Shown: piece after piece, positions 2,717 to 56,857 of the stretch
Layout of the letters: the number at the start of each line of letters is the position of its first letter
Position numbering within the stretch: the stretch's first letter is position 1
DNA from: Haliotis rufescens
Taxonomy: Eukaryota
NCBI RefSeq assembly: GCF_023055435.1
Contig: NW_025963813.1
Location: 38,440,001 to 38,504,000, forward strand
DNA length: 64,000 nt
Direction of reading: 5' to 3'
Position numbers and translations under genes: made by a program
Notes under the pieces: model-generated
Told to the model about the DNA's origin: nothing
Seen by the model: the letters and a program-made list of their open reading frames with translations, nothing else
Databases searched by the model: none

Positions 2717-5700
2717 CTGCTTGTACTAGTCCGGACTGATGCCGATTTATAGTGCTAGCTCACTGAGATACAATGCCGCAGATTAACATGAATACCCCAC
2801 TCAGACACAGTATACTGACTCCGAGCCGACCAGTCCTTGTTTTAGCCCCTTAATGCCGAGCGTCAGACAGGGTAACAACAAGTACCATCTTTTAACGTCT
2901 TTTGGTATGACGCGGTCGGGGATCGAATCCCGGACCTTCCGCTCTCCGGGCGGACGCTCTACCACTAGACCACGGAGGCGGTCTCCCAACGTGACAGACA
3001 TGCTGCTACTTCTGAAGACGTAACCTACCATTTCCCAGTTCGAATCCAGCAATATGGTAGCCTTTCTGTGACGAGTATTTAAGCAACAATTCAGCATTCG
3101 ATGGGTCCCATTTTCCTTGCTTCCGCAGTAAAATATTAAGGTCGAATATAAGCTTCACCCCCGTGTTATGAACAAACTTGTTAAGAATATCCCAGTCTTC
3201 AGCTGCAAGATGAAGTACAAATATCTGAAGGGATCAATGCATAAAGCGAGGACACAAAAATGTCATCAAAATACTCCTTGACTTGACTTCCATTAATTGT
3301 ACATTACATGCTCAGTACATAACCGGAACAGGTGACACAATGGCGCACGGTGATATCAAGTTTATTCTTCGCATTGAGACAGACTATTGTACCACAACTG
3401 TCTATGACTGGTTCTTATTTGTTGAGGTGAGGTGAGGTGAGATGAAATTGGGTTTAACGTCGCGTCCAATATTATTGCACTTACATAGCGACGTGCATGC
3501 ACGTGTGTGATGCTGATTTATAGTGCTAGCCCACTGAGATACCATGCCGCAGTTTAACGTGAATACCCGACTCAGACACAGTATACTGACTCCGAGCCGA
3601 CCAGTCCTTGTTTTAGCCCCTTAATGCCGAGCGCCAGACCGGGTAACAACAAGTACCATCTTTGAACGTCTTTTGGTATGACGCGGCCAGGGATCGAACC
3701 CCGGACCTTCCGCTCTCCGGGCGGACGCTCTACCACTAGACCACGGAGGCGGTCTCTTATTTGTTGAAGAGTCAAATCATCCAAGTTTATTGTATTCAGG
3801 CAGTGTACCGATATGATTATCAGATGTTGTTGACAAAATTGCTATAACATCGTGTCAAATGCACATATTGAAATCTAACCGACTTATCTATGGCATTGAC
3901 AGCGTTATATGTGTTTGAATGTCATTGCAAGCGTGAGTTTGCACTGCAGTCTGGATCGGTGTCCCTTTCCACAAGGCATTCGTAGCTTTACGATCGTAAC
4001 TATATAGTTTATCACAGTCTTACAAATGTCGTAGTGTTATTTCTTTAAAAAAATCACTTTGCATTTTTTGTCTTGACTATAAGTAATACTCCTTATTGGC
4101 TGAAGTTCTTGTTTCACGTTATAATTATTAGCACACATGCAGCTATCTTCGTCAACTACTCATTGCGATATTTCGTGATTCTATGTTCAGTGGCGAGGAC
4201 AATAAGGTATTTTACTACAGAGGACACAGGTAACAGAAATCGTCATGTCTCCTTCAATGATTAAGTATATTGTTAATGATACGAATAGTTATTTAAATCT
4301 TATAAAATACTAGGTCAAGCTATTAAATATGCCATCTTCAAGATACCCTAGAAAATGTTATAATATGATGCTTCTCTACGATAGCAATGGGAAGCAAAAT
4401 CGGGCAACAAAAGTCAAAAACATGTTATACGAAAGTGGATATGGTTATATTTGGTTACAGCAACATATAGATATGCCACAGCATTTCTTCCACCGTTTGA
4501 CACAGACCTTAAAATATATGTACATCCCAAAATGGCATGGTTCTTTGTCCAGTTCTAGAAAAGCAAATTACTACACTACATTTAAGACTACTATTATACT
4601 AGAACCTTATCTATTAAGTGTAAATTTCTCTTTCTCGATTTCGTTTTGGCCCACATGATCTATTTATTGAAACAGGCAGATATGAAGGTATTACAAGAGA
4701 ACATAGACTTTGTAGGATTTGTAAAACTGATTGTATTGAAGATGAATATCACTTTTTATATGTATGTCCAGTGTATAAAGATTTACGAGCAAAATATCTA
4801 AATAACTATTTCTACCGTAACCCAATCGGTAACAAATTTTGTAAATTAATGACTTGTGATTGTACAGAAACTATTAGAAATGCATCAATGTTCATTTATC
4901 ATGCTATGAAACTAAGAAAATGTATGAATTTGTAACACGCCCCAGACAATGTACTATAGGCCTTTGGCCTCATAAGTACCATGAATAAAGATTGATTGAT
5001 ACGAATCTTCTTACTCATTTCTTCAGGAACTTTTGAGGCCGACAATTCTTAAACAGCTACAGGTTACTCACCCAATAGTTTGAACGGCGATGCTGCGTTG
5101 GAGCTATGCTGTGTGGCATGGGGATCAAACACGACATGGTCAGCCGAGGTTCCCCCGACCCTCAGATATGAGGGAACGAGTTCTTTCACAAGCTTCTGGA
5201 GATTTGGTGAACTGTACAATGATACAGATGTAAATTATATCAGACGTGTTTGCTGAGAGGTAAAAGCTAGGAAAAATATACAGTCACCTAATCTTATCGT
5301 GTTTCATACCTGTGATGGGATCGAGTGGGTCAGACATGCTGACTTGATTGATACATGTAATTGTATCCACACTGTGCAGTCCGATGCTCATGATGTCAAT
5401 CACTGGATGTCTGGTCCAGACTCGGTTAATTACAGACCGTCGTCATATAGCTGGAAAATTGTTGTGTGGCGTTAAACAAAAACAAACAAACGAAAATTGA
5501 TGGAAAATTTGTTTTTAAAAAAGACAGAAAATAATCATAATGTTGTGAGTGAGTATGGTTTTACGCCGCTTTTAGACATATTCCAGCAAAAGCACGGCGG
5601 GAGACACCGTGAAATCGACTTCACACATTGCACCTGTGTAGGGAATCGAACCCGGGTCTTCAGCGTGACGAGCGAACGCTTTAACCACTAGGCTACTCGG

Positions 5701-10249: not shown

Positions 10250-10500
10250 TTGTCGACACGGACACAATATGATTTAATATATGCACACAAGTTGTATCAA
10301 TGTCGACCCAAAACATTTGTATCAATGGCGACACAACACGATAAGCCTCAATGTCAACACAACACGATATTTATCAATGACGACAAAACACGATATGTTT
10401 TTTTGACGTTACAACAGAATATGTGTCAATGATGACACAACATAATGTGTAATTTTTTTTACACAACACGATATGCCTCAATACCGACACAACACAGTCT
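10250..10500. repeat. Degenerate tandem repeat of about 26 bp upstream of gene B
   Basis: Recurrent ATCAATGTCGACACAACACGATATG-like units. Confidence 0.6.
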
Positions 10501-10568
10501 ATATGAGACCACCTCACATGAATATAGACTATGTGTGACATTCAGTCAGATAAGACAAGCCAGAGACA

Positions 10569-13500
10569 ATGAAGGTAACACTGTCAGTGCTCCTCCTGGT
10601 CACAACCTTCATGTCCTCCACATCATCGGGAGCAGTGAATGTCAGTGTCACGGTGTCCACAACACAAGCAGTGTCATTTATTGATGAACTATTTGTGGGC
10701 GTCACACTTGACTCCAGTCTCCTGCCGACCCCACAACACTGGAAAGGATTGGACTTCAGGTAAGTCAGTGAAGGTCATTGCCATAGATGACAATAGATAT
10801 CAAGTTATTGAAGATTCCTTGATTTGAAATCCATCATTTGTATTCACACTTATAGCTGAGATTTGGACACATCATATTCCTAGTTTTATTCATGCACATA
10901 ATTGATATGAAACAGACATAATTGTTTTAATCGAGCTATTGTAGATTCCTTTCATTTGAAATTGATATTTTGTATTCTTGTATTTTGGTAACGGCATAGT
11001 TCAAACTAGCAAAGCAGATGTCTACAATAAAAATGATTTCCAAGCCGTTTATCACAGAAAAAAAATATAAATATATAATAAATGCATGATGCTACTTCTG
11101 TTGTTCGTTAATTTATTTAGATAAATAGTATTCTCTTTGGATAGGTAACCAAGGCATGCGGTATAGCACATATAAACCTGCTCAATTATTTATGACGTAT
11201 GTCCTGTATCACGCTATTGCTTTACCTCCAGCTCTCAAAAAGTTCAGGCACTGGCTAAAGGCTTGTCTCCATGCTATCTGAGGATTGGAGGAACTGAAGG
11301 TGACAGCCTGACCTTTGACCCTACCGGTAATGGCACAGTAGATGTCAATCGTTCATTTACAGGTGCGTACATCTACTAAAGATATATATAGTTTGTCTTG
11401 TTGTTGTATTGCGGATGGATAAACCTTTGATTTTATTGTCACTGAGGTAGGATAAGAGGTGGTTCAAATATTAGAGCATCAGATGTGTTTGGGTGCTGTT
11501 ACTACAGTTGTATCTGCAGGAGCTACCTGATGTGTTTGGGTGCTGTTACTACAGCTGTATCTGCAGGAGCTACCTGATATGTTTGGTGCTGTTACTACAG
11601 TTGTATCTGCAGGAGCTACCTGATGTGTTTGGGTGCTGTTACTACAGTTGTATCTGCAGGAGCTACCTGATGTGTTTGGGTGCTGTTACTACAGTTGTAT
11701 CTGCAGGAGCTACCTGATATATTTGGGTGCTGTTACTACAGTTGTATCTGCAGGAGCTACCTGATGTGTTTGGGTGCTGTTACTGCAGTTGTATCTGCAG
11801 GAGCTACCTGATGTGTTTGGGTGCTGTTACTACAGTTCTATCTACAGGAGCTACCTGGGATGCTGTAAATACATTTGCCCAGGATGTGAACTGGAACTTT
11901 ATATTCGGTCTGAACGCCCTGAAGAGGAAGGAGGGACAGTGGGATCCTACTAACGCAAAGGAACTGCTGCAATACAACAGTGCGAAGGGGTACCAGCTGG
12001 CAGGTTTTGAACTCGGAAACGGTATGTATATAACTAAATACACGGATATATATGATTGAATATAAATTCAATATACAACTAATAAAGAAATAAAATTAAA
12101 TGTGCCAAAACGTTTGAACATCTGATGACATTTCTTTCATGAATCTGAGAAATTACCTTTTGCCCCTTAATTTCATACACAGAAAAATCAAGGAAAATAT
12201 CGCAATTTTACAAGATTTATGACTTGCCAATAACATCTCGTGACATTAATTCAGAAGTGTAACTGGTTACAGAACCTGACTTATTCCCTGGGCAATATAA
12301 CATCACTGTCAGCGGCAGTCAGTTAGGTAAGGACTTCTATACCTTCAAGAAGCTGCTCCGATCGACACCAGGGTATGAGGTGACACCAGTTATCGGACCT
12401 GACATGGCCTCTATAACTGGAGCAAAATCACAGTTCTTTGCTGAGTAAGTAGACTGAACTGACAATGTTGTCAATGAATTTACCTAAGGGTCGTGGCCAT
12501 ACAGTTTGACAAAAGAGTAAACCTCAATTCTGGTCGCAAAACATAACCCCCGAACAAAAACAAATGCACCACCTGCACGTGGAACACGATGGTGGACCCA
12601 TTGTTACAGCACCCGATGGCAATTAGAAAGAAACACCAAGACAACCTAGTAGAAAACATAATACCTAAATAATTAATATATTATAATAAACTGATGCTTT
12701 TTGTAGCCACCCAGTCAATGTGATATATCAATTTGGAGAATTATGGATGTAGAATCGTAGTCCCTTTTGTTCTGAAATACGTATAGTACTGGTTTATCTC
12801 ACGTGGTTGCTGTAGAAATATCTGTTGTGCTGTGAAGAGACAAAACCTACCTTCGTATTCGTCAGTTTGTCACGTAGAGTTGGATCTATGGTTTGAAGTA
12901 ACATACATGCACAATCGCTGTTTGAAGACATAACAGATTACAGCAACTCACACAACAATGCCCACTTTGTTTCCTCAGTTTCTTCACAGGAGGGGGAGAC
13001 AAGGCCGTGGACAGGATAACTTTTCACCAGTAGGTTGTTTACTTTAGAATCTATGTATTGTTCTAGACTACTTAACCTGTACCGGTTTTTCATTAAGTGA
13101 ATGGTCAAATATTATGTTTGTTGTAATTAAAATGCTTTGTATAAAGTTCATGGAATACTGACACGTTGCCCAAGTCAAATCTAGGAAAGTCCACAAATGC
13201 AATATTACACAGGAAGTTTACTTTCTGCTCTAAAAAAGTCAACCATCTCTGTTTATCATCACATTAACTGATTGAATAACGTAAGCCATGCCACCAAGTA
13301 TATGTACATGTTTTACCTGTTTGTGACATTTCCTACCAACCAAAGAAGATGAACCATGGTCATCAAACCTATCGATGTTTCTAACAGATACTACACCAGT
13401 GGCGAAACGGCAAACCTCACAGATTTTACTGATTCCAAGTTAATGGATAACCTGGTCACTTATATAGAGACGGTGTTGGATGTGACAAGACGCACCAACC

Positions 13501-16337
13501 CACTTACCCCAGTCTGGTTGGGAGAAACATCCTCCTGTTATCATGGCGGTGCCCCGGGAATCTCAGACAGATATGCCGCTGGGTTTCTGTGCGTACAACT
13601 TTAGCATATACACTTCCTACCTTGGTCAACTATACACGCATACTGATAATGAATATTGGTTCATGTCGTCTATCTAGGGCTGAAATATTGTAGATATGAA
13701 GAGATGACACAAAGATAAGATTTGTCTTCGGATGTAAGGACGGTTGTGATGTAATAGAATAGACGTGTGTGTGTTTAGATGCAACATATACACCACCTGT
13801 TGAAAGTGTACCCTTTTCAGGTGGCTGGACAAGCTTGGTGTTGCTGCTCGGATGGGACTGAAGACAGTTCTCAGACAGGATTTCTACGCAGCAAGCTATG
13901 GACTTATTGACAATGATACGTTTGAGCCATTGCCTGTAAGTACAGAACCAACCAGATTTCTTATTTCTTTCTTGAATATACATTTACACGACGTCACATC
14001 TTCTGGACAGTTCTTTCCTCTTGGTGTCATTCCTTACTTTCAGTGATCACACTGCACACTCTGATTTTACCGTTTCCATGTTAACGGATCACCTGATCAG
14101 TTATATAGAGACAGCTATGGATGTGTCAAGACGTACCAGCCAACCTACCCTTTCTTGGGGAGACATCCTCCTGTTATGATGGAGGTACACTTGGAATATC
14201 AGACATATATGTAGCATCTATAAAAAACAATCACTGATTTTCAGTACTGCATGAATATAGATTCACCGTTATGTTGCCTTCAAGCCAAATGGAATCTATT
14301 TCGCTTTTAAAATCGAGACTGGTTATTCTCTAGCATTGGCGTTGTATAATTATGGTATGAGTGAATCACGACCATGTAATCTGACTGATAATTCTGCAAC
14401 AGGTTGTGACACAATTGGTCAAAGTGGGTTGAGTGTTATGCATTTATCTCATGGAATGAAATCATTAGCCACCTTCTAAGGATGATGAAGCCTAATTGCT
14501 GCTGGGGCGGTCGGGTAGCCTAGTGGTTAAAGCTTTCGCTCGTCACGCCGAAGACCCGGGTTCGATTTCCGACATGGGTACAATGTGTGAAGCCCATTCC
14601 TGGTGTCCCCCGCCGTGATATTGCTGGAATATTGCGGGGTAAAACCATATTCACTCACTCACTAATTGCTGCAAGATTGCTCATGCGGCTCGACGCAAGA
14701 ATCACTCACTCGATTGATGTTATCATGTTATGACCTTCTTGGACATATAGACGTCTATATTAGCAAACCATTATCTTCACTATCATCTGATGTATCGATG
14801 AAAAATAATCATTTTCTCAAGTTGAAAACATGACCAAATATGAGTGGAGAAAGAGAATAAAAATGACTGAGCTGAAATATTGAAAACATGTTACAATAAT
14901 CAATATTTCAGCTTAGTCAGTGTGATAAAGCCTTTCCTCTTCCAAGACGCACTCTTCTGTATATGTCACAACCTAAGTACCTTAAGAAAAAATGAACGTT
15001 TAACATAGCGAAATGTAGTTGCAGTGCATTTTTTTTTCTACATCGATATTAATGACAAATGATGAGTTAGTTTTATTCAATCTGTTTTTTTACTGCAGGA
15101 CTACTGGTTAACCGTCCTGTATAAGAGACTCGTGGGAGGCGCCGTGTTTTCAGTAGAGGCGACCGTGGACAACAGCACCATCAGGGCCTACGCCCACTGC
15201 ACAAAGCCTTCCATGTAACTTGACAACCAAAATTACAACTGTAACCAGACATCGTAATGCATCAGGCTGCAAACACGAACATTCATAATAACAAACTATC
15301 GAATGAGATAAAGGCTATGTGAGGTGAGATACCATAAAACAGGGTTTAACATAAGATTATTGCGGGTTACAGGGTAACAACAAGTGCCATCTTTTGACGT
15401 CTTCTGACATGACGCGGCCGGGGAACGGATGAAAAGGGCAACATTATTGATGACCATTGGTCCTCATTATCCTTTATTTGTAATTCACGTGGTAACATAG
15501 TTCTCCTTCCGTCCGCAATCACGAAATCAAATGAGTTCATTTACATGCAAAGTGAATTAGTCCGCTATTACTTCGTGTTGTGTTTTAGTTCCTATGGCTA
15601 CATGCCCGGCGGTGTGACGATGTATTTCCTGCTGACCACAGACAACAACACCTCCATAACGTTCCCACAGTTTCCCGACCAACCTGTAGACGTGTTCTGG
15701 TTGACGCCAGTCGATGGACTCACTAGCAGGTAAGACCCCAACCAACCTGTAGACGTGTTCTGGTTGACGCCAGTCGATGGACTCACTAGCAGGTAAGACC
15801 CCAACCAACCTGTAGACGTGTTCTGGTTGACGCCAGTCGATGGACTCACTAGCAGGTAAGATTCCCAGCGAAGGTATAGAAGTCGTCTAGTTCACACTTG
15901 TCCTTGGACTCACCAGACGTCCTCTGGTTCACACCAATCGATGTCACTAGTATGTAATTTCCCAAACTAACTTTTACACTAATATATGAATGAGTTGCAG
16001 GTTGTAAGAGTAAGTCGGTACTTTCTTCTTGAAAACCACAGAAAACCATTCGTGAAATTATCATATATGTATTGGTTTACTATAACATACACATGTGATA
16101 CATGAACGTTACAAACTATAATTGTTCACAAAGTAGCATGTCAGCTCATGTTCAGTTCTCTGTTTTTACCATGTTAGGAAGGTGGCCTTGAACAACAAGC
16201 AGCTTGACCTTGTCAATAATTCGCTGCCGGAGCTGAAACCTTACAGGACAGAAGAAAACACCATCACCTTCCCCGGGAAGTCATTCGGGTTCCTCGTCTT
16301 CCCTGAGGCTAACGTAGCCTCCTGCAGTAGCCAGTAA
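10569..16337 (+). CDS. HPSE: Heparanase-like GH79 gene B, complete, 10 exons, 483 aa
   Basis: Exons 10569-10759, 11232-11362, 11848-12021, 12273-12444, 12979-13029, 13388-13588, 13821-13935, 15099-15214, 15589-15729, 16178-16337 total 1452 nt and are open throughout. Motifs YLRIGGT, FELGNEPD, ITFHQYY, WLGETSS, WLDKLG, PDYW, YAHC; signal peptide; all introns GT-AG. Confidence 0.93.
11482..11856 (+). repeat. Minisatellite, 8 x 47 bp, made of the exon 3 splice acceptor of gene B
   Basis: Unit GATGTGTTTGGGTGCTGTTACTACAGTTGTATCTGCAG|GAGCTACCT. Confidence 0.92.
14062..14215 (+). pseudogene. Degenerate duplicate of gene B exon 6 inside intron 7
   Basis: Colinear with 13423-13580 (gattttac...ttatatagagac...acatcctcctgttatgatggaggt...atatcagaca), with a deletion across the PVWLGE region. 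Confidence 0.8.
14504..14661 (+). mobile_element. Short tRNA-derived SINE family 1
   Basis: GGGTAGCCTAGTGGTTAAAGC...GGGTTCGATT head, (ACTC)n tail, 11-bp TSD CTAATTGCTGC. Other copies at about 2430-2560(-), 5548-5708(-), 5765-5900(+), 50940-51025(+), 53570-53730(+), 63910-63965(-). Confidence 0.85.
15679..15861 (+). repeat. 3 x 63-bp tandem repeat of the exon 9 end plus donor of gene B
   Basis: GT donors at 15730, 15793, 15856; degenerate fourth copy near 15910-15958. Confidence 0.92.
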
Positions 16338-16389
16338 TGACGTTCAGAGAATGAGAGAACAAACCTGTATTTTCTGCGCCTGCTATGGA

Positions 16390-16395
16390 AATAAA
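16390..16395 (+). promoter_or_regulatory. Polyadenylation signal of gene B
   Basis: AATAAA about 50 nt after the stop codon, followed by T-rich sequence. Confidence 0.6.
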
Positions 16396-16439
16396 TCTTA
16401 ATATTATTGATTCACTTATCTGTTTCTGTCCGACTGAAT

Positions 16440-22100: not shown

Positions 22101-25100
22101 CCCAGATAACATTTTGAACTTCTGTTTTGCACGTTTCTGCTTACTTCTCGAACAATATGGATCTCGGTCCTGAGATACCTGTTACATCTGGTCCAATCAC
22201 CAGCGTGGATTCGAACCCAGGAGTAGACTTGAGGATTTCCCTAAGATGGACAAAATCTCGCCCAAGCTGTGCTCCAGAAATTGTATTGGTGAAGGGTTCA
22301 GGGAAATATTCAGGTTCTAGAGACCAAAGAAACTAGAGTATTATATCAAGAATATGATTATGGTCGTTACAGTACATATGTTCGTCATGCTCTACACCTT
22401 TTGACTTTGAGATTGAAGAATAACGTGCACATATCTTAAAGTAGTAAACAGAATGACCTAGGTATAACTAATTATACATACTTGGTGAAGTATAATATCA
22501 TACACAAAGAGGTTACGTTGTATGTTCTATTCAATGAGCTGAAGAACTGTTACCATTTCCGAGTTCAAATGCGGGCATCTTGTAGTTCCTGGCATAGCTA
22601 TAGCTCATCAGTTCTTTGGCGTTTTCAGGGTCCCACTGTCCGTCTTTCCGCTTCAATACATTAAGGCCAAACACCAAGTCCCATCCCACGGCCCTCACAA
22701 AGTCATTCAGATTGTCCCATATGGCACCTCAATGATAAAATAGATTGTTTATGGGTACATTTCTCAGCTGGATGAGGCCAATAAATTAACTCGGATAAAC
22801 AAGCAACATAATGTAACGTACACGTAGGTACTCAGTGTTTGCGAACAAACATGGCGTCGCTCTTCTTAATCGTCGATCGAGTCAGAATTAATATTAAGAA
22901 GTCATCCTTTGTTCAGTTCAATATAAATGTTCTCGAAAGACAGATTGAACGTCTTAGTTTAAGTTAGATACCACCACCAAACCAACGTCCGGCTATGCCT
23001 CTCTCCGAAGATATTGTTCACGTGCAGAAACGCTTTTTGAAGCATGTCGCTGTCGAAGCCGAATATCAGTTTCAGAAAACAAATGTCTTCGCTGCCAGTT
23101 TAAAACGACTGATCACTGACATTGCGACATAATATTTTAATGCGAACATTCCAAGATAAGTTTCGATAATAGATTCATGAATAACATTATAAGACAAAGT
23201 GGCTATCGTGGTTGTGTGTGCTTGGATGTTAAAAACTATGTACTTTTTAAGTACAGTGTTCATTCCTCATAGAACATATTTACCATCCCAAAACACACAC
23301 GTGTGATAACCCCTATATGTCCTTCTTTTGAAAACAATAAAATATTCATTTAAACAAATGTAAATGAGATCATTGATCGATATGGAGTACAATTTTGAAC
23401 ATTGGCCTATTGTAATCAGTGTAAACTGATTTTTGGACCAGGGATAGCAAAAAATTACCACAAGATACTAGCTTCCGCCCAAAATCCGTAGGGCCAATGA
23501 CGAAGGGCAGATAACAAGTAGGTTTTGATGATATATGTCGCCCTAATGTCTGCAATTGCTGGTCCGATTACTTACACTCTTTGAATGGTAAGTCCCCATG
23601 GTCCCAAGTAAGGTGGCCTTACTTTGGTTACTGGTGATCTATAGCCCAATTTAAAGCCCGATTGAAAGTGTATTCTCTTAACTGTTCTCAACTAGTTGTA
23701 AATTAAAAAAATGTGATACTCTAGTTATCTTATCGTCCATCGTTGACAGCTTTTTTAATCTAAATATAATTATTATAACTGTTTCGTTACGATATGGCTA
23801 AAATATTGCCGATGTGACGTTAAATTTCACTCACTCACTCACTCACTCACTCACTCACTCACTCACTCTGAATGTGTTTGCTGCTTTAGGTGCTTGACAT
23901 TTTTTGTTCTTTGTCTTTGGTCATCTGTCACGTGGTTTAGTCGCCATTATGGATTCATGGTTTCACAGTGTGGATTGGTGCATGTCTTTACATCCATACT
24001 CTCTGAATCAACTGCATAAAATGCTTCCAAACTCTCTGAGAGTTCTCTCAATACATGCCACATTAAATATGTATTGCCGGTTTTGGATATCTTTTTAGTT
24101 GCGGATATATTGGATTTTGATTTTGATAATTTATTTCTCATAAATTTTACTTTAAATATCATATCTGTTTTGTTCTTGTTTGCATGGTAAAAGTAGTACT
24201 GCTTGGCAGTTATGTTTGATTCAAGTTAGTACTCTAATTGAGTACTACTAATAATAAGCGCCCCACAATTATTGATTAACCCCCGTTCACTGTCTAATTA
24301 GAGAGCCAAGAGCAATACACAATCTTGTCACAAATGTCGTCAGTTTTATGTATATTACCCGTGAAGAATAGAGTTAGAACTGGTTTTCAGCAAACCCATG
24401 CTTGTCTTGTCGTAAGAAGTGACTAACGGAATCGGGTGGTCAGGCTTGTTGCATTTGTTGATGCATGTATTCGTTTTCCAATAGGCAATTGCTTCGGTGC
24501 CTTACGTTGGATAGCATTGGTACAAGCAAACCCTTCGAGGATTTTAACATGGAGGAACACTCTTTAGAACACCCTTGGACACACTGGCACACGCCAATTT
24601 CATAGCGGCGGTTCCTGGGGTTCTACGCCGTGCGCCACACAAGCCGAGTCGGCGAGCGCCCGTGTCAACCCAAACCGAGGCGGAGAGCCCTTGCTTAGCG
24701 GGGTTCGGGATCCCGTCTTTGGCTATGTTTGAGCGTCCGCAGGAACGGCAGTAAACTCAATTCCTTTCTTCATTCAGGCAGTTACTGAAGCTCATTCGCT
24801 CAGCGATAGTGGTATTGAAACTGTCGTTTTGTGTCGTCCACGCCCACACCATTGTGTAAGCACCGCTTCTCGTCCACTGAGTTGCCCGATTATGTTCAAA
24901 TGTTGTTTGCGTATGTAGACAGTTGCGTTCCAGATACCACCAACATTCCAAGGCCGTGCTTTTGTGTCTAAGGAGCCCGACATTGCTGCTTACAGCTATA
25001 TTTTACCTTATACTTACTCACGGAATCAATGTCAGGGGTTTGCATATGATCTTACTACAGCAGTTAAAGCAGGATTCAGTACAGATTACATTCCTAATCA

Positions 25101-26446
25101 TTGAATGTGACAATTTTTGAGACCTCTGCTCTACATTAACTGCATATTTCACAGACTCTGGATGGCGTCAGGATTATTATAAGCAGTGTAAATCCCTAAC
25201 AACTCAAAACGTTGTCACGGCGAAGGAACCTTATCACTTGATGAATGTTATGACCCAATTGATATCATTCATTTTTCTGGCATTGAATACTCCCAAAACG
25301 AAGTGTCGTATATATTATATAAGTCACATAAACATACCAGTAAAAGTGGAGTTTGCACTTGTACCCCCATGACCCGTTGGGTCAAATGTATTGAAGTCTC
25401 CAGCTGTTCCGCCTATTCTCAGATAGCTGGGGGATAACGCCTTAGCAAGCGTCCGCACTTTGGGTGAACTAGAAAATTAATTTCAAATATTATATCATCA
25501 AAATGATTTGTTCTTTTTCAAACGTGAACGATTGTTCACCATATTCGTATGATATATAATGTTTTATCATAAACTTAAGTGTGAAAGACTGAGTTTGATA
25601 TTTTCATTGCAGTGAACATGGCAATTGATATTTCACTGCACTGAACATAACACTTGATATTTCTCTGTTGCCATTTATGGAGTTAATATCGCTTCAGGCC
25701 GTATGTTATTCTCTTAGAGATTGTTTCGTTATATACTGTAAATTTCTCACTTAACTCGTCAATCGAGACTGGTCGTTTCGCAAAGCGCAATTTTGTTTCT
25801 TGACCAGCGTGTATTCTTTCGCTTCAAACAGCGGTTTGGTAGTTTTCAAGTATATTTTTTTTGTTAAAGTTGATTTTGTATATAACCATATCTATATGTA
25901 TGATAGAGACGTTTCGTGCCCCTAAAAATGTCTTGCTTCTCTTCTTCATATTTTTTAAAGATTATGCAAACACGAAACTACTTCTCCAGTTGCAAATACA
26001 GGGGGTGGTGAACCATCCCTGTGTGTTAGGTAGGGAGAATTTACGTTTCAAGTTTTTACATTTGTAATGAAATATTTACCGGTAGACAACTACACAAAAA
26101 GTATATAAAAAAAAAATATTTCTTATGTCTCGTAAAATATTATGTTTCTCTCATCGCGTGACGGGGAAAAATGAGATATATCCTTTTCACCCGTGATATT
26201 TCACTCGACACATGAAATATCCTCTCTACAGTAAACTACATAAATAAACTAATACACTCACCGTAAATCCAGTCCTCCCCAGTTAAAAGCTATTGGTATC
26301 TCTGCTGAATCAATTGTCACTCCAACGAAATGGTCATCTATCGTTGCTATTTCCTTGTCTGTAGCAACAGTGACAGAAACAGACTGACCCACTGTACATT
26401 GCACATGTAAGGAGCAGAGTATAACGAGCACACGTGTCACAGTCAT
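19178..26446 (-). CDS. HPSE: Heparanase-like GH79 gene C, complete, 10 exons, 478 aa
   Basis: Exons 26262-26446, 25338-25468, 22554-22727, 22145-22316, 21840-21890, 21486-21686, 20516-20630, 20101-20213, 19655-19795, 19178-19331 total 1437 nt, open frame. GNEPE and WLGETSS intact. Intron 9 has a GC donor. Confidence 0.92.
23828..23867. repeat. (CACT)n microsatellite (SINE-tail type)
   Basis: Perfect run preceded by a gacgttaaa tail motif. Confidence 0.85.
25553..26228. mobile_element. Unclassified insertion of about 670 bp in gene C intron 1
   Basis: Intron 1 is 793 nt in C but 123-148 nt in D/E/F, with alignable flanks; internal repeated gatatttcactg motifs. Boundaries approximate. Confidence 0.5.
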
Positions 26447-32600: not shown

Positions 32601-34695
32601 ATATGTTCGTCATGCTCTAAACATATCGACTTTGAGGTTGGTACGAATTACACCGTACACATATGTGACGGTAATAAATACGGAGTAATGATCAAGAAAG
32701 GCGGAGGAATTATCAAGTAATAACTGTACATACTTGGTAAAGCATTATATTGTATACAAATATGCTACGTTGTATATAATATCAAATGAGCTGTAGAACC
32801 ATACACTACCATTTCCGAGTTCAAATGCAGGTATGGTGTAATTCCTGGCATTGCTATAGCTCATCAGTTCTTTGGCGTTGTCAGGGTCCCACTGTCCGTC
32901 TTTCCGCTTCAACACATTGAGGGCAAACACCAAATCCCACCCAACGTTCTTCACAAAGGCATTAAGGTCGTCCCATTTAGCATCTCAAACATAAGATATT
33001 CAAGTTTATCATACAGTGGGTAAGATTCTCATCAGGATGACGCCAACGAATAAAAAGTCGAATAAACATGCAAACATAAGGTCACGTAAGTACTCAGTGT
33101 TTGGAAACAGACAAGGCATCGCCCTTGTGTATCGGCGATCGAGTTAAAAGGGAACATCAGGGATCTGGAACTATTTGAGAGATAATATATCACAGTTCTA
33201 TAAAGAAGTCATTCTTGATTCTGAATAATAGAACTGTTCCTGAAGGGAACGTGAACGAAAGAGCCTTACTTTGATTCCACCACCAATAATCTCCTATCTC
33301 CTATAACGTTGATCAACTTCAACATGTTCATTCAAGCATGTTGTCACATCATGTTTTTGTTATTACTTCTAAAACTAATGGTCGACCCGTGAAGATTCGG
33401 GGTAGAATAGGTCTTCAGCAACCCATGCTTGCCGTAAAAGGCTAGCTGACATGGTTAAAGCTTGTAATCGTATCCCATTTGGTTTGATAGATGCTCATGA
33501 TGTCAATCAGAATGTCTGGTCCAGATTTGTTTAGTTACAGACCGCCGTCATACAACTGGACTATTTATGAGTTAAGCAACAAACAAAGTACAATAATGTC
33601 CATAAAGCCGACGATAGGTGTCTAAAATCAAATGTTTTATCAACCTCCTGTCACTCTATTTCTGAATTATCACTGAAATTGTTACGTCATATATTAATGC
33701 GCACATTCCAGGAAACCTTGCAATGTTTAGGAACCATTGGTAAGAAATGAGAATACATATTTCGGTAATAGTTTTAGGAATGACATTATATGGTAAAGAT
33801 GTCATCACGCTTGTGTGTGCTTGGAAGTTAAACCCAATGTACAATGTTCATTCCTTGTAGAGGATATTTACCATCCCAAAACACACTCGAGTCATAACCC
33901 TCCATATATCCTTCTCATAAAAACAATGTATTGCAGGTCACTGATTCATATGTACATGTGGCAGAGGTATTATATTGAACATTGCAGATTTTAGGTACAA
34001 TCGAGGACTCCAGAGAGCTTTACTTGACTTTTGTTCAAAAGTAATTTGATCAGTGTTACAACATTCAAAGCCTAGGTAAAGGATTCTAAAAGTTTTATTG
34101 TAGACATCATGAGGAGGTTTCCAAATTTGACACACCAGTGGCGAAAATGATGTCCGAGACGATTCTCCTGTTATTATTGTCATGGGTACTAAATACTAAA
34201 TACTCCCAAACCAGGTATCATATATATATATATCATGTCATGTCATGTAAGCATACCAGTATAAGTGGAGTTTGCACTTGTACCCCCATGTCCTGTTGGG
34301 TCAAAGGTCATGAAGTCACCAGGTGTTCCGCCTATTCTCAGATAGCCCGGGGATAATGCTTTTGCAAGCGTCTGCACTTTAGGTGAACTAAAACATTGTT
34401 TAAGATGAAATATATTCTCAGAAACTGAAAATATTTGTTTTCTTTCAAACTTAAGGATTATTTATCATACTCATATGATACAGTGTTACAGTGAATCACA
34501 ATACACTTACCTTAAATCAAGTCCCTCCCAGTTAACAGATATTGCTAGCATTGACGAATCCAATGTCACCCCGACGAAATGGTCATCTATCGTTGCTATT
34601 TCCTTGTCTGTAGAAACAGTGACAGAAACAGACTGACCCACTGTACATTGCACATGTAAGGAGCAGAGTATAACGAGCACACGTATCCAATTCAT
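29626..34695 (-). CDS. HPSE: Heparanase-like GH79 gene D, complete, 10 exons, 478 aa
   Basis: Exons 34511-34695, 34257-34387, 32810-32983, 32370-32541, 32049-32099, 31693-31893, 30683-30797, 30306-30418, 29980-30120, 29626-29779. Same exon sizes as gene C; GNEPE and WLGETSS intact; GC donor at intron 9. Confidence 0.92.
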
Positions 34696-44700: not shown

Positions 44701-47700
44701 ATGTTCACATCATTACAATGTACATGTTGGTGTAAAATTAATACAGTCACGTTTTGTTTTCGATTGAGCAGTATACCTCTCTAAAGGTGATGTTTTACAC
44801 TCCAATATGCAGCATTCCAGATATATCACTGAGGCCTTTAAATAACCAACTACCGAGACCATAATAATGCTATGATCAACGAACGATGTCGAGGTACAAC
44901 TGCATATATTAGTAGCGGCTCTGGTGACACACGAAAGTTGTTGAAGCTTTAATCTGATTTTTTACACATGCAACTTACAAAGTTCAAAACTAATTTCGGT
45001 TGAGAGAACTTCGAGTAATTGTTTCAGTTATTCTCTTCAAAGGGTTTTCTGAGAACATTAAACGTACCGTTTGGTAACAAAGTTTATAAATATGAAAAGT
45101 CAACGTCAGATAATTACGCAATGGGGATTATACAATTATTTGAAACAAATTATGAATTAATTGCATGTCAAAGCATACGAGTGCAAATCACAACACATGT
45201 CCAAAAAAGTTGCAACAAAATTCATATGAGGATGAGGGCTAATACACAAAATTAGATCACAGTTATAACCGTAGTTGGTTATAAAACATATATACAGCAT
45301 ATAAACAGCAAATGGCCTGGCCCCAAAATCTGTTCGTTAAATCCGCCAGTTCGTTATAAACGTAGTTTACTGTACATGAATTCCATGTGTACGTAACATT
45401 TGTTCACCAGACATTGTTGTGAGTTATAAGAAACGAAATGCTAACCTATAGTAGACATTCTTGACAAATACTCACAGAAAGCCGGCCACATATCTATCCG
45501 ACAGTCCAGGCGCTCCGCCTCCAGAGAAAGAAGACGTCTCCCCGAGCCACAAGGGAGTGTCGGGGTTGGCGGGGGTGGTGACGTTGCGTACTATGTCAAT
45601 GAAACTTATGAGACTGTCCATCACTTTGGGGTCGATAAAGGTGTCCACTTTAGCATTGCCTTCGAAGCCGTAGTAGCTAGACATTCAATAATTCCAAATT
45701 AGGTGAGAGTAGGTGAACTGTGATTTAACGTCACATACAAGGATAACGTGGGCAGCATGATAGAACCGAGGATCAAACCACAGAATTTCTGCTCTCTGGG
45801 CAGGCACTCCATCTACTAGACCACGGATGTAACCTGGCACAAATTATTAAATATCTCCTTTACAAAGCATCTCAATGTTCATTACTGATTAATAGTATCT
45901 GTTGTCAAATGAAACTTAATTGAATATATAAATAAGAAAATTATAATAGCTTACTCACTGGTGGAAAGTTATCCTGTCAAGCGCTTTTCGTCCGTCCCCT
46001 TTAAAGAAACTGTAAGGGAATACATGTGAATCTAACAATACGACTCTTCTATTTATACTGGTTCATCCATACCGAGAACATCGGGCATAAGGAAGTATCT
46101 GCATACATGGTGTCAGTTTTACTGTAAAATCAGTATACCATATTGCTGTAATCAGTAATTATTTATCACAATAATGCTGCTTTCATCTGTTGTCATAAAG
46201 GCCCTTATACCAATTGCGCTGATTACGAGAAGATATGTTTTGTATTTTTCTACTTACGTTTTAAACAATATCGATTTTGGCCCTGAGATAGCTGTTACGT
46301 CTGGTCCAATCACCAGGGTGGATTCAAAGCCAGGTGTAGACTTGACTATTTCCCTAAGATGGACAAAATCTCGCCCAAGCTGTGCTCCAGATATTGTATC
46401 GGTGAATGGTTCGGGAAAATATGCAGGTTCTAGAGAACAACCAAGTAGAGTACTGAATCAAGGAAATGACTCATGAATTCGAAACACATGAATTCATAAA
46501 GCACCCATAGCTGACTTTGAGTCAAGCACGATATGTTTTAGTAACACACGCAGATGAAGAAGCCAGGAAAAAAGTATATCGTCTACAAGAATGCTTGGCT
46601 GTATAATTATGACCTATATAACTATACACTACCATTTCCGAGTTCAAAGGCCGGTATCGTGTAGTTCCTGGCATTGCTATAGCTCATCAGTTCTTTGGCG
46701 TTTTCAGGGTCCCACTGTCCGTCTTTCCGCTTCAACACGTTGAGACCAAACACCAATTCCCACCCCACGATCCTCAAAAAGTCATTGAGATTGTCCCACA
46801 TAGCACCTCAAAGATAAAAAGAAGAAGCATGTACTTCCATCGAAAGCAATATTTATTCATGCAAATAGTAAACAGTTATTTTGATTGATTGATTGATTCG
46901 TGTCGCTGTGTATAAGGATTTTAAATTACAAAACGTTTTTAAACAGGAGCTTGCGTATGATGATTTCACAGCAGATAAAGTCAAGATTTTAAACATATTA
47001 CGTTGTGAATCATTGAATGGGAATTTTACCACCAGGCTTCACGGAATTGTAATTGCAACGGACTTTGTAAGTCCTTGTCAGCTCAAACCGTTTGACTTTT
47101 TTAACCAGTTGAACATTATTCAGTTATGATTGTCATGGTATTGAGTACAGCTCCCCCCTCNNNNNNNNNNNNNNNNNNNNNNNNNNNNNNNNNNNNNNNN
47201 NNNNNNNNNNNNNNNNNNNNNNNNNNNNNNNNNNNNNNNNNNNNNNNNNNNNNNNNNNNNNNNNNNNNNNNNNNNNNNNNNNNNNNNNNNNNNNNACATA
47301 TATAAGTCATATAAACATACCAGTATAAGTGGAGTTTGCACTTGTACCCCCATGACCCGTTGGGTCAAAGGTCATGAAGTCTCCAGGTGTTCCTCCTATC
47401 CTCAGGTAGCACGGATACAATGCTTTAGCAAGTGTTTGCACTTTATGCGATCTAGTTTTAAGATAAAGTATATTCATCAGAAACTGGAAATAGTTGCGTT
47501 GCTATTTAAAACTTCAAATAATTTGCACCATATTCATGTATTATACTGTTACCTGAAGCAAATACAATCTATTTATCATTATTTGAATAGTACACTCACG
47601 CGAAATCAAGTCCTTTCCAATCAATTGATATTGGAAGCATGGATGAATCAAAGGTCACTCCAACGAAATGGTCATCTATCGATCCTATTTCCTTGTCTGT

Positions 47701-54200: not shown

Positions 54201-56857
54201 AAAATAAATCCAAGAATCAGAGCCGTTTTATAATTGTTTTATACATTGGGTATTGTCAGTGACTCTTATTTTAGGAAATGAGATAGTGTCAGAGACACTT
54301 CAAAATATTGAAAATATCTGATTTAACATATTGCTGTAACAAAGCAATTGGGAACATTTATCTATGCTTATGAGGCATAATTGACAGTGATTCATAAACA
54401 CATGGTCATGATATAGTCGGAATCGTACACTCGAATCTGCTTTAGCGGAAATTTCTTATGAATTTTGAAGGGTTTTGTTGCATTTATTTACATTCAAATA
54501 ACAACGCTCTTGTTGCTGTTACCAATCTTGACATTTCTGTCACGTTCACTTCCACTTACTCTCGGAACACCAATGATTTCTTCCCTTTGATACCTGTAAC
54601 GTCTGGTCCAATCACCAAGGTGGATTCGAACCCAGTAGTAGACTTGAGTATTTCCCTAAGATGGGCAAAATCTCTCCCAAGCTGTGCTCCAGATATTGTA
54701 TCGGTGAAGGGTTCGGGAAAATATGAAGGTTCTAGAGACCAAACGAAGTAGAGTACAAAATTACGAATGTCATTTTTTCCCCATTGAACTACACAGTTTG
54801 AAATTTTCAACGTACAATTTAAGATTTGCAATGTACTCTTATGGCACGGGGATTAAACAAGGTATATTGTCACTTGGAGAAATAGAATGTGAAATAGATA
54901 GATGTTACGCTGTTCACTACCATTTCCGAGTTCAAATGCGGGTATCTTGTAGTTTCTGGCATTGCTATAGGTCATCAGTTCTTTGGCGTTGTCAGGGTCC
55001 CACTGTCCGTCTTTCCGCTTCAGCACGTTGAGGCCAAACACCAAGTCCCAACCCACAGTCTCCAGAAAGTTATTAAGTTTGTCCCATTCAGCACCTCAAA
55101 AATAATCAACCAAATGTACCATACAATACGTCCGTTCGTGGCATGATGAAGCCAAGGGATAGCTATGCCCGGATAAATATGCGAAGAGAAGAATTGCACG
55201 GCTACTTTCGGTGTTTACAAAAAAAACATGGCATCGCCCAATATATAAATTACAGTCCCAGAGAAGTCAAATCATTATGTAGGACAGTTGGAAAGACATC
55301 GCTTAACGTACGTACCACCACCAAGACCACGTAAGAACAGACTGCTAACGTGTTTGTAATCATTATCAAAATAATAGTCCACCAGTCTCTGAAAACATGT
55401 TAACTGCCAGTTGGCACCATCCGACAAACTAATCACTGGCTAAATGATGTAATATCGTATCAATGCACACATTCCAGGAACACTTGTTTTGGAACAGAGA
55501 TGAGAATACGCATTACGATGATAAATGTATGATGACATTATATGACGAACAGGTTAACACACTTGTGTGTACTAAGATATTACAAACTATGTACTTAGCT
55601 CGCCATCCCGTGATGATCCAGGTTAGGTCTTCAACCCATGCTTGCCATAAAAGGCGACTGTGCCTGTCTTAGAGGCAAATAAAGGGACCGGGTGGTCAGG
55701 CTCGCTGGCTTAGTGCATGTCATCTTACCCTGATGGCGTAGATTGATGCTCATGATGTCAGTCACTTGAATGTCTGGTTCAGACTCGATAATAATCGATT
55801 ATTAACAGAGTATATATAGCTGGAATATTGCCTTGTGCGGTTTTTAAACATAAATCAAACAAAGCACGCAAACGTTTGCTCAATACAATGTATATTCCCG
55901 AGACAAATATTACCTATCCCAGAACCCACTTGCGCGAAATTTATATCTATTTATCTTTCTAGTGTATTCATATGAGGAAATGCATTGCAGAATTAATGGC
56001 TGACATGTACATGTATGGGTTTGAACTTTGCAGTTGTCTGTACCTTATTGAAAGTGCCTGTGTTATTGTAACCACATTACTCCAACTTTCACAGGCGCTC
56101 TATTCCTTCAGGGAAAATAACACACTGTTTAAATGAAGGCAATAGGTTCGCTTTGAAATATTAAACGTCTTGAACCAATTCAACATTATTCAGTTATGAT
56201 TCTCGTGGTATTGAATACTTTCAAACCAGGAGTCACGTGTATGTCATGTAAACATACTAAGCTTTTCAATCAATTCTGTCATCGCAATTACCCCTGCCAG
56301 CTCAACCGTTATGAAATAATGACAGCTATGAACCAGTTCAACAATATTTAGTTTTGACTATCGTGGCATTGAATAAACTTCGATCATCACTGCCCAGAAT
56401 CATACCAGTATAAGTGGAGTCTGGACTTGTACCCCCATGACCCGTTGGGTCAAAGGTCATGAAGTCTCCAGGTGTTCCGCCTATCCTCAGGTAGCACGGA
56501 GACAATGCTTTCGCAAGCGTCTTCACTTTAGGTGAACTAGAAAAACAAGTCTTACAATAACAGGTATTCTCACAAACAAAAAAGAGTTGTTTTAGTTGAA
56601 ATTTAAAAGATTATTAATCATATTTATGTAAAATAGTGTTAAATGAAACTCATAAGGAAATGATACACTCACCCGAAATCGAGCCCCATCCAATTAATAG
56701 ATATTGGTAGCATTTGGGAATCAAATGTCACTCCAATGAAATGGTCATCTATCGTTGCTATTTCCTTGTCTGTAGCAACAGTAACAGAAACAGACTGACA
56801 CACTGTACATTGCACATGTAAGGAGCAGAGTATAACGAGCACACGTGTCACAGTCAT
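51273..56857 (-). CDS. HPSE: Heparanase-like GH79 gene F, complete, 10 exons, 478 aa
   Basis: Exons 56673-56857, 56406-56536, 54921-55094, 54560-54731, 54137-54187, 53798-53998, 52618-52732, 52174-52286, 51679-51819, 51273-51426. GNEPS and WLGETST; GC donor at intron 9. Confidence 0.92.

What the first reader, a model, noticed from the sequence alone, without database searches (positions are those of the whole stretch)
11232..11870. All paralogs lack the proheparanase inhibitory linker: predicted single-chain, constitutively active endo-enzymes
Seen: only 16 residues (19 in A) lie between FDP in exon 2 and WD in exon 3, e.g. [21 protein letters not shown]. Exon 2 ends in NST[YF]TG, which aligns with the NSTYSR start of the human 50-kDa chain, so no exon is missing. 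Known: human proHPSE has roughly 60 residues here, including the Ser110-Gln157 linker removed by cathepsin L. Short-loop GH79s such as leech hyaluronidase have an open cleft and need no processing. Inference: these enzymes are active on secretion.
Basis: partly seen in the sequence, partly recalled or inferred. Interest (0 to 1): 0.8.

Follow-up and report, generated by a model that had tools for sequence, protein, structure and literature searches.

The report
Abalone heparanase-like enzymes without activation linker
Six neighbouring red abalone genes for heparanase-like sugar-cutting enzymes truly lack the removable "safety-catch" segment of the human enzyme. This is the usual state in invertebrates and the genes are already annotated, so the finding is sound but fairly ordinary.

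Summary
In window genes B-F, 16 residues lie between FDP and WD; gene A has 19; mammalian HPSE has 63. FDP and the NST[YF] motif, which aligns with the start of the human 50-kDa chain, sit in the same exon. No hidden exon could therefore supply a linker. For gene B, RNA contigs from four runs join 11362 to 11848 directly. RefSeq models matching genes A, B, E and F have the same join.

An AlphaFold model of a RefSeq protein close to gene E superposes on human proheparanase (Z 50), leech hyaluronidase (Z 49) and the mature human 50-kDa chain from residue 159/160. About six residues replace the excised human segment, much like the engineered, constitutively active GS3 single-chain heparanase. Catalytic and -1 subsite residues are mostly kept. 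Both basic heparan-sulfate-binding clusters are absent.

Single-chain architecture is shown. Activity without proteolysis is likely. Endo action and the substrate are inferred.

Short connectors (12-22 residues) are widespread in invertebrate GH79 proteins. The genome also holds paralogs with 26- and 32-residue connectors. These genes belong to a Haliotis-specific expansion with at least 24 exon-3 copies on one chromosome.

Verdict: new member of a known kind; modest interest.

The parts
10569..16337 (+). Gene B (heparanase-like GH79, 10 coding exons; matches RefSeq model XP_048250495.1 = P0312, 483 aa). Exons from the RNA joints: ..10759, 11232-11362, 11848-12021, 12273-12444, 12979-13029, 13388-13588, 13821-13935, 15099-15214, 15589-15729, 16178-about 16337.
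   Evidence: RNA contig joints with GT..AG in 3-4 runs; tblastn of P0312, with exons 1-3, 9 and 10 100% identical; Pfam PF03662.
11232..11362 (+). Gene B exon 2. It encodes ...LRIGGTEGDSLTFDP-TGNGTVDVNRSFT, so both the end of the 8-kDa-chain equivalent and the start of the 50-kDa-chain equivalent lie in one exon.
11363..11847 (+). Gene B intron 2 (485 nt). It holds no coding exon.
   Evidence: The RNA joint 11362>11848 appears in all four runs; depth inside the intron is 0-10 against 100-400 in exons.
11482..11857 (+). A 47-bp x 8 minisatellite that filled most of intron 2 by copying the 3' splice site and the first bases of exon 3. The upstream copies would read G-A-T-stop.
   Evidence: TRF, 95% matches; sequence reading; RNA uses the last copy.
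11848..12021 (+). Gene B exon 3: (G)ATWDAVNTFAQ...GFELGN. The acid/base Glu is completed across the exon 3/4 junction.
3030..5213 (-). Gene A exon 2 (5213-5072) and exon 3 (3202-3030), with a 19-residue connector.
   Evidence: (P0310/P0204 98% identical).
22555..25470 (-). Gene C exon 2 (ends at 25338) and exon 3 (starts at 22727), with a 16-residue connector.
32811..34380 (-). Gene D exon 2 (ends at 34257) and exon 3 (starts at 32983), with a 16-residue connector.
46634..47462 (-). Gene E exon 2 (ends at 47321) and exon 3 (starts at 46806), with a 16-residue connector. Intron 2 contains the N run 47161-47295, which was left as it is.
   Evidence: (P0185 100% identical in exons 1, 2, 4 and 10).
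54922..56535 (-). Gene F exon 2 (ends at 56406) and exon 3 (starts at 55094), with a 16-residue connector.
   Evidence: (P0302 100% identical in exons 1-3).

Best explanation
The window holds six intact, tandemly arrayed genes of a Haliotis-specific expansion of secreted GH79 retaining beta-glucuronidases.

In each gene, a 16-residue connector (19 in gene A) joins strand beta-2 (..RIGGT..FDP) to the next helix (WD..N.F). It is Gly/Ser/Thr-rich and usually carries an N-glycosylation sequon. Mammalian heparanase has 63 residues at this place, 48 of which form the helical lid that cathepsin L must cut out.

The lid was never there, so the protein folds as one chain. The part equivalent to the human 8-kDa chain is linked by about six residues to the part equivalent to the 50-kDa chain. 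The cleft should be open as soon as the protein is secreted. The enzyme should then hydrolyse a beta-glucuronide bond with Glu(NEP) as acid/base and Glu(GETS) as nucleophile, most likely inside a polymer (endo mode).

- Shown: absence of the linker, the exon structure, transcription of gene B, the fold, and the catalytic residues.
- Inferred: activity without proteolysis, endo mode, and the substrate. For the acidic copies B-F, which lack both basic HS-binding clusters, the substrate is probably not highly sulfated heparan sulfate.
For: **Gene structure and transcripts.**
- Junctions were read directly.
- FDP and NST[YF] lie in one exon.
- RNA contigs of four runs from three studies join exon 2 to exon 3 directly.
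- RefSeq models of four Haliotis species, 475-495 aa, have the same join.

**Family and catalytic residues.**
- Pfam Glyco_hydro_79n, E 4e-27.
- N163/E164 and E284 are invariant or nearly so in 100 homologs.
- The equivalents of D62, T97, H296/Y298 and Y391 are kept (residue list from PMC9500389).

**Structure.**
- AF2 model of P0185 (close to gene E): pLDDT 94.3, connector about 83.
- VIA Z 50.1 to proHPSE, 49.2 to leech hyaluronidase and 45.5 to mature HPSE. Model residue 99 aligns with human residue 160.

**Published analogies.**
- The engineered GS3 single-chain HPSE is constitutively active (PMC10398610).
- A short loop gives an open groove in endo-acting BpHPSE (24 aa), against an exo pocket in AcaGH79 (40 aa) (PMC9500389).
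- Leech LHyal is active and endolytic when made in Pichia (PMC3966032).
- The connector contains no dibasic or other obvious cleavage motif.
Against: - No enzymology exists for any abalone GH79.
- The cleft geometry could not be inspected, because the tools return no model coordinates.
- Loop length alone does not decide exo versus endo. The leech enzyme is endolytic with a loop of about 38 residues, while AcaGH79 is exo with a comparable one.
- Some copies carry changes next to the -1 subsite. Gene B has CYHGG, with His at the human G349 position. Gene E has SFSGGG, with Ser at the Y348 position.
- RNA evidence was obtained for gene B only. The other genes rest on RefSeq models and homology.
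- The modelled protein is a database paralog 93-100% identical per exon to gene E, not the window's own spliced product.
Confidence: 0.7

Rival explanations
1. They are exo-acting beta-glucuronidases. Other loops, or the connector itself, close one end of the cleft into a pocket, as in Acidobacterium AcaGH79 or plant and fungal GH79 enzymes. They would trim terminal GlcA from glycans rather than cut polymers.
For: GH79 contains both exo and endo enzymes. The -1 subsite is conserved while the residues of the -2 and +1 subsites, including the basic HS-binding clusters, are not. The model also aligns well with AcaGH79, Z 38.5.
Against: Counted from the conserved GG to the start of the next helix, the loop is about 24 residues. 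That is my own boundary assumption. It equals endo-acting BpHPSE (24) and is far below exo-acting AcaGH79 (40). The nearest structural relatives by a wide margin are the two endo enzymes, HPSE and leech hyaluronidase, at Z 45-50.
Confidence: 0.2
2. Part of the array consists of catalytically weakened or non-enzymatic copies, comparable to HPSE2, or of genes on the way to becoming pseudogenes. In that case the absence of the linker would have no consequence for activity.
For: This is a fast birth-and-death array. The window contains pseudo-exons at 14042-14216 and 17617-17540 and a stop-containing copy at 61056-62535. Some paralogs elsewhere have altered nucleophile surroundings: WLWETSS in P0186, and GETGSFFDHG with loss of the Y391 equivalent in P0208.
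Against: Genes B-F keep both catalytic Glu residues and most -1 subsite residues; gene A's acid/base exon is intact, but its nucleophile exon lies outside the window. Gene B is transcribed and correctly spliced in four runs. Orthologous copies are kept in four Haliotis species.
Confidence: 0.1
3. A linker-coding exon or an alternative isoform exists but was missed.
For: Introns 2 of genes A, C, D and F are 1.3-2.6 kb long. Gene E's intron contains 135 N. Contigs drop rare isoforms.
Against: The human linker lies between FDPKKE and KKFKNSTY. In the abalone genes these two flanks are 8 residues apart inside one exon, so an extra exon could only insert downstream of the linker position. The direct join is seen in RNA for gene B and in every full-length RefSeq model. 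The one 540-aa model is longer only at its N-terminus.
Confidence: 0.02

Closest known systems
Human heparanase HPSE (GH79, EC 3.2.1.166; PDB 5E8M mature, 5LA4 pro-form)
   Same: - Same (beta/alpha)8 barrel plus beta-sandwich fold: Z 50 over 450 residues, 39-40% identity.
- Same NEP acid/base and GETS nucleophile; D62, T97, Y298 and Y391 equivalents are kept.
- Secreted, and the N-glycan sequon homologous to N162 is kept in genes C-F.
   Different: - No 48-residue Ser110-Gln157 linker, so no cathepsin-L activation step and no two-chain form.
- Both basic HS-binding clusters are absent in B-F.
- Predicted pI is 4.9-5.8 for B-F, against 9.1-9.3 for the mammalian enzyme.
- The substrate is therefore uncertain.
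Engineered single-chain heparanase GS3 (Nardella et al. 2004, as described in PMC10398610)
   Same: The 8-kDa and 50-kDa parts are joined by a short Gly/Ser-type bridge of 6 residues. The abalone model likewise bridges the two parts with about 6 residues (TGHGGT). GS3 is constitutively active.
   Different: GS3 is man-made and keeps human KKE and KKFK on either side of the bridge. It has 13 residues between FDP and NST, where abalone has 8. The abalone connector is natural and conserved in four Haliotis species.
Leech hyaluronoglucuronidase LHyal (GH79, EC 3.2.1.36; PDB 7EYO)
   Same: - Animal GH79 enzyme that is active as a recombinant single chain without processing, and endolytic (PMC3966032).
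- Fold match Z 49.2, rmsd 1.9 over 448 residues.
- NCBI names some abalone paralogs 'hyaluronoglucuronidase-like'.
   Different: - The leech connector is about 35-40 residues, estimated from alignment coordinates, against 16 here.
- The leech NIDWELGNEP motif reads [AG]FELGNEP in the abalone genes.
- The abalone genes are equally distant from HPSE and from LHyal: E 2.5e-91 against 7e-81.
Burkholderia pseudomallei heparanase BpHPSE (PDB 5BWI)
   Same: Single-chain GH79 with a short (24 aa) loop at the linker position, which opens the pocket into a groove; endo-acting (PMC9500389).
   Different: Bacterial and only about 20% identical (Z 38).

Membership tests
Glycoside hydrolase family 79 (Pfam PF03662 Glyco_hydro_79n) | Significant match to the family profile | tested here: met
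   P0312 (gene B model) scores 95.6 bits against a cutoff of 23.1. Exon 3 alone scores 41.8 bits.
Glycoside hydrolase family 79 | (beta/alpha)8 barrel with a flanking beta-sandwich | tested here: met
   AF2 model with pLDDT 94.3. Z 36-50 to all solved GH79 structures. The model is of RefSeq protein P0185, a close paralog of gene E.
Glycoside hydrolase family 79 | Catalytic pair: Glu acid/base in N-E-P and Glu nucleophile in G-E-T/S | tested here: met
   ELGN|EP spans the exon 3/4 junction in B-F, and in gene A's RefSeq counterpart P0204. WLGETS is present in genes B-F; gene A's nucleophile exon lies outside the window. Both residues are invariant or nearly so in 100 homologs.
Glycoside hydrolase family 79 | GlcA -1 subsite residues: human D62, T97, N224, G349/G350, Y391 (list from PMC9500389) | tested here: met
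   All are kept in the C-F type. Gene B has His at the G349 position (AcaGH79 has Gln there). Gene E has Ser at the neighbouring Y348 position.
Vertebrate-type heparanase (HPSE, EC 3.2.1.166) | Latent pro-enzyme with an excisable linker of about 48 residues, matured to an 8 + 50 kDa heterodimer | tested here: not met
   The connector is 16-19 residues against 63. RNA shows a direct join.
Vertebrate-type heparanase (HPSE, EC 3.2.1.166) | Basic heparin/HS-binding clusters (human Lys158-Asp171 and Gln270-Lys280; residue ranges are from general knowledge of the field, not from a tool) | tested here: not met
   The aligned segments are [13 protein letters not shown] and [13 protein letters not shown] in the C-F type, and they are also non-basic in B. 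The 32-residue paralog P0206 keeps a KKHYKN motif.
Vertebrate-type heparanase (HPSE, EC 3.2.1.166) | Endo-beta-glucuronidase activity on heparan sulfate | not testable with these tools
   Needs enzymology.
Leech-type hyaluronoglucuronidase (EC 3.2.1.36) | NIDWELGNEP motif, with the Asp that PMC3966032 reports as distinguishing LHyal from heparanases | tested here: not met
   The abalone genes read [20 protein letters not shown] or IAGFELGNEP.
Leech-type hyaluronoglucuronidase (EC 3.2.1.36) | Cleavage of the beta-1,3 glucuronidic bond of hyaluronan | not testable with these tools
   Needs enzymology.

The most novel reading that the evidence does not exclude
The near-minimal connector is one feature of a Haliotis-specific burst of secreted GH79 enzymes. 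At least 24 exon-3 copies lie on one chromosome, and a four-gene block has been segmentally duplicated about four times. These enzymes have shed the HS-binding basic clusters and split into acidic and basic subfamilies. They may have taken on new GlcA-containing polymer substrates, for example algal or microbial glucuronans, ulvan-type or fucoidan-type polysaccharides in the diet of a seaweed grazer. A single 32-residue-connector paralog that keeps a KKHYKN motif would then carry the ancestral heparan-sulfate function.
Probability: 0.2. Interest if true: 0.6.

Novelty: new member of a known kind. Interest (0 to 1): 0.3.

Why it matters
The finding shows that the cathepsin-L-activated lid of heparanase is a vertebrate elaboration, not a general animal feature. 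Bivalves and heterobranch gastropods hold separate long inserts at the same place.

It also offers natural, conserved minimal connectors as templates for stable single-chain heparanase-type enzymes.

A large abalone GH79 expansion with unknown substrates could be useful to glycobiology or for processing seaweed polysaccharides.

None of this overturns current understanding. The genes are already annotated as heparanase-like, and single-chain GH79 enzymes from leech and bacteria are already characterised.

Tried and rejected
1. **Cassette-exon scan of intron 2.** The coordinates I used for genes A, C, D, E and F were off by 1-24 nt, so the frames were wrong, and I do not rely on it. The candidates looked random anyway. 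The same-exon argument and the RNA joints replace it.
2. **Residue-level alignment to the leech enzyme.** It could not be displayed because the HPSE entries fill the top alignments. No leech sequence was among the stored proteins. The leech connector length is therefore an estimate from alignment coordinates.
3. **Literature searches.** Searches for abalone or mollusc heparanase-like enzymes, their tissue expression or their linker found nothing specific. A 2025 review states that invertebrate heparanases are poorly defined.
4. **Earlier scan notes.** They gave only titles.
5. **Repeat in gene B intron 7.** Rfam and ARAGORN found nothing for the hugely covered element. By eye it is a tRNA-derived SINE.
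6. **Cleft geometry.** It could not be measured, because the tools give no model coordinates.
7. **RNA for the other genes.** Reads were laid on gene B, so genes A and C-F have no read-level evidence here.
8. **Joined spliced models.** I did not build or submit any joined spliced model of the window's genes. Window exons were searched one by one. Full-length work used RefSeq and other database proteins returned by the tools.
9. **N run.** The N run 47161-47295 was left untouched.
10. **The large representative search.** I used it because single exons cannot reach full-length relatives through the length-filtered word search.
Full report
**What is in the window.** The window comes from red abalone, Haliotis rufescens. 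An earlier scan note says so, and RefSeq H. rufescens proteins match window exons at 100%. A motif scan and tblastn with gene B's exon peptides show a tandem array of GH79 heparanase-like genes:
- Gene A on the minus strand: exon 2 at 5213-5072, exon 3 at 3202-3030; the gene runs off the window start.
- Gene B on the plus strand, 10569 to about 16337. The finding's coordinates lie here.
- Genes C, D, E and F on the minus strand.
- Pseudo-exons at 14042-14216 and 17617-17540, and a stop-containing copy at 61056-62535.

**How the window's genes were handled.** All full-length analyses used database proteins returned by the tools. The N run 47161-47295 in gene E's intron 2 was left as it is.

I read the exon 2/3 junctions base by base. 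All six introns are GT..AG with a phase-1 split codon.

| Gene | Exon 2 ends / exon 3 starts | Residues between FDP and WD |
|---|---|---|
| A | 5072 / 3202 | 19 |
| B | 11362 / 11848 | 16 |
| C | 25338 / 22727 | 16 |
| D | 34257 / 32983 | 16 |
| E | 47321 / 46806 | 16 |
| F | 56406 / 55094 | 16 |

- phmmer against PDB places exon 2 on the 8-kDa chain of human heparanase, ending at FDP, and exon 3 on the 50-kDa chain. In single-chain proheparanase 5la4_A the two exons map to residues 45-79 and 137-190.
- A full-length abalone protein aligns to 5la4_A in two blocks that leave 49 human residues and 2 abalone residues unaligned.
- In a 100-sequence alignment, mammalian HPSE has 63 residues between FDP and VD. 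Abalone [12 protein letters not shown] lies exactly under mammalian FKNSTYSRSSVD.
The human linker (Ser110-Gln157; PMC9500389) lies between FDPKKE and KKFKNSTY. In the abalone genes these two flanks are 8 residues apart within a single exon. No overlooked exon could supply a linker at that position.

**Transcript evidence.**
- Logan contigs of four RNA-type runs, from three studies and two organism labels, were laid on 10450-16400. They cover the exons and not the introns.
- The joint 11362>11848 (GT..AG, 485 nt skipped) is present in all four runs. One 394-nt contig runs through exons 1, 2 and 3 without extra letters.
- The other eight introns are confirmed in the same way.
- Intron 2 of gene B is mostly a 47-bp x 8 minisatellite that copies the acceptor and the first bases of exon 3. 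The upstream copies would read G-A-T-stop. Depth there is 0-10 against 100-400 in exons, so the last, productive acceptor is the one used.
- RefSeq models exist for these genes. P0312 (XP_048250495.1, 483 aa) matches gene B, P0302 matches gene F, P0185 is close to gene E, and P0310/P0204 are close to gene A. All have the direct join.
- The only longer model (P0186, 540 aa) is extended at the N-terminus and has the same connector.

**What the proteins are.**
- Pfam assigns Glyco_hydro_79n, at 95.6 bits against a cutoff of 23.1.
- The acid/base N-E(P) and the nucleophile (G)E(TS) are invariant or nearly so across 100 homologs.
- The -1 subsite residues listed in PMC9500389 (D62, T97, N224, G349/350, Y391) are kept. 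Two local exceptions are His at the G349 position in gene B and Ser at the Y348 position in gene E.
- An AlphaFold2 model of P0185, built with a 100-sequence alignment, has mean pLDDT 94.3 and pTM 0.92. The connector scores about 83.
- The model superposes on human proheparanase (Z 50.1, rmsd 1.8 over 450 residues), leech hyaluronidase 7EYO (Z 49.2) and mature human 50-kDa chains (Z about 45.5, rmsd 1.3-1.8). The last alignment starts at model residue 98-101, matching human residue 159-162.
- So the second half of the connector follows the path of the N-terminus of the mature 50-kDa chain, and the preceding part follows the 8-kDa chain. Only about six residues (TGHGGT) bridge what are two free chain ends in the human enzyme.

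**How it most likely works.**
- The arrangement closely resembles the engineered GS3 heparanase. In GS3 the linker was replaced by three Gly-Ser repeats, and the enzyme is constitutively active (PMC10398610).
- PMC9500389 relates loop size at this position to mode of action. The loop is 40 residues (Gly78-Thr117) in exo-acting AcaGH79, where it walls off a pocket. It is 24 residues in endo-acting BpHPSE, which has an open groove. The proHPSE linker corresponds to the same loop.
- Counted the same way, from the conserved GG to the start of the next helix in the model, the abalone loop is about 24 residues. This boundary assignment is my inference.
- Leech LHyal is secreted from Pichia as an active, non-processive endolytic enzyme (PMC3966032).
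- The abalone connectors contain no dibasic or other obvious processing motif.
- I conclude that single-chain architecture is shown. Activity without proteolysis is likely, at roughly 0.8. Endo action is probable but unproven, at roughly 0.6.
- Loop length is not decisive by itself. The leech enzyme is endolytic with a connector I estimate at 35-40 residues. That estimate comes from alignment coordinates (P-equivalent at residue 80, W-equivalent near 119), the acid/base numbering in the paper, and the 29-residue length excess over the model.

**The substrate is open.**
- Both basic heparin/HS-binding clusters of HPSE are absent in genes B-F.
- Predicted pI is 4.9-5.8 for B-F, against 9.1-9.3 for mammalian HPSE. 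Gene A-like proteins and another 16-residue clade are basic, at pI 8.9-9.2.
- The proteins are about equally distant from HPSE and from leech hyaluronidase. They lack the leech NIDWE motif.
- Calling them heparanases is therefore not justified. 'GH79 endo-beta-glucuronidase-like, substrate unknown' is the safer label.

**Context that lowers the novelty.**
- A profile search with the nucleophile exon found 425 proteins at E up to 0.001. A word search with a full-length Haliotis protein gave named relatives.
- Connector length at this place is very plastic:

| Group | Residues between FDP and WD |
|---|---|
| Sponge | 17 |
| Corals | 16-19 |
| Crinoid | 20 |
| Annelid | 22 |
| Chiton | 16-20 |
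| Cephalopod | 21 |
| Patella | 12-33 |
| Littorina | 18-31 |
| Heterobranch gastropods | 38-47 |
| Bivalves | 19-90 |
| Mammals | 63 |

- Short connectors are thus common in invertebrates.
- H. rufescens itself has paralogs with 26 residues (P0205) and 32 residues (P0206). P0206 keeps a KKHYKNFT motif and groups with Gigantopelta.
- A FastTree phylogeny that excludes the connector columns places all the short-connector Haliotis proteins in one Haliotis-only clade (33 rows, local support 99) inside a gastropod clade whose other members mostly have about 20-35 residues. The 16-residue form may therefore be a secondary shortening. This tree is quick and not rigorously tested.
- A published survey found 1-4 GH79 genes in seven other molluscs (PMC7560691).
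- A six-frame search of this genome finds at least 24 exon-3 copies on one contig between 38.18 and 40.41 Mb. The C-F block is repeated about four times at 91-98% nucleotide identity.

**Verdict.** The genes are already annotated in RefSeq as heparanase-like, and single-chain GH79 enzymes are known, so this is a new member of a known kind. The size and diversification of the abalone expansion are more interesting than the missing linker itself.

Noticed in passing
window 14504-14640 (gene B intron 7): A tRNA-derived SINE-like element, with box A TAGCCTAGTGG and box B GGTTCGATTTCC. Summed contig depth is 10^5-10^6, and more than 120 contigs with unrelated flanks occur in every RNA run. Rfam and ARAGORN give no call.
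   Followed up: partly
window 11482-11857: A 47-bp x 8 minisatellite made of copies of gene B's intron-2 acceptor plus the first bases of exon 3. The upstream copies would give G-A-T-stop. RNA contigs use the last copy, and depth inside the array is under 5% of exon depth.
   Followed up: partly
G000 contig C35, 38.18-40.41 Mb (loci L001-L030): At least 24 exon-3 copies of this GH79 family lie on one chromosome. The four-gene C-F block recurs near 39.25, 39.65 and 40.33 Mb at 91-98% nucleotide identity, introns included, which indicates segmental duplication of the array.
   Followed up: partly
proteins P0235, P0078, P0227, P0293, P0231 (veneroid and myid bivalves): The long (59-80 residue) inserts at the linker position carry a conserved dibasic motif of the R-x-K/R-R type just before D[IV]G[YF]. 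This suggests convertase-type cleavage and possibly an independently evolved two-chain activation in bivalves.
   Followed up: no
proteins P0206/P0320 (H. rufescens XP_048250306/305), elsewhere on the same chromosome: A paralog with a 32-residue connector keeps a basic KKHYKNFT motif aligned with human KKFKNSTY and groups with Gigantopelta. It is a candidate conventional heparanase ortholog of abalone.
   Followed up: partly
window 14042-14216 (+), 17617-17540 (-), 61056-62535 (+): Relics of the family: an extra frameshifted exon-6-like piece inside gene B's intron 7, a lone exon-2-like piece, and a partial copy with an in-frame stop.
   Followed up: no
window 15727-16178 (gene B exon 9/10): Run X5 shows a second donor at about 15853-15855 joining the same acceptor at 16176-16178. 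The other runs use 15727-15729. This is a possible alternative 5' splice site or allele.
   Followed up: no
proteins P0312, P0185, P0302, P0184 versus P0204, P0086: The expansion splits into acidic subfamilies (pI 4.9-5.8; window genes B-F) and basic ones (pI 8.9-9.2; gene A type and another 16-residue clade). This hints at different substrates.
   Followed up: no
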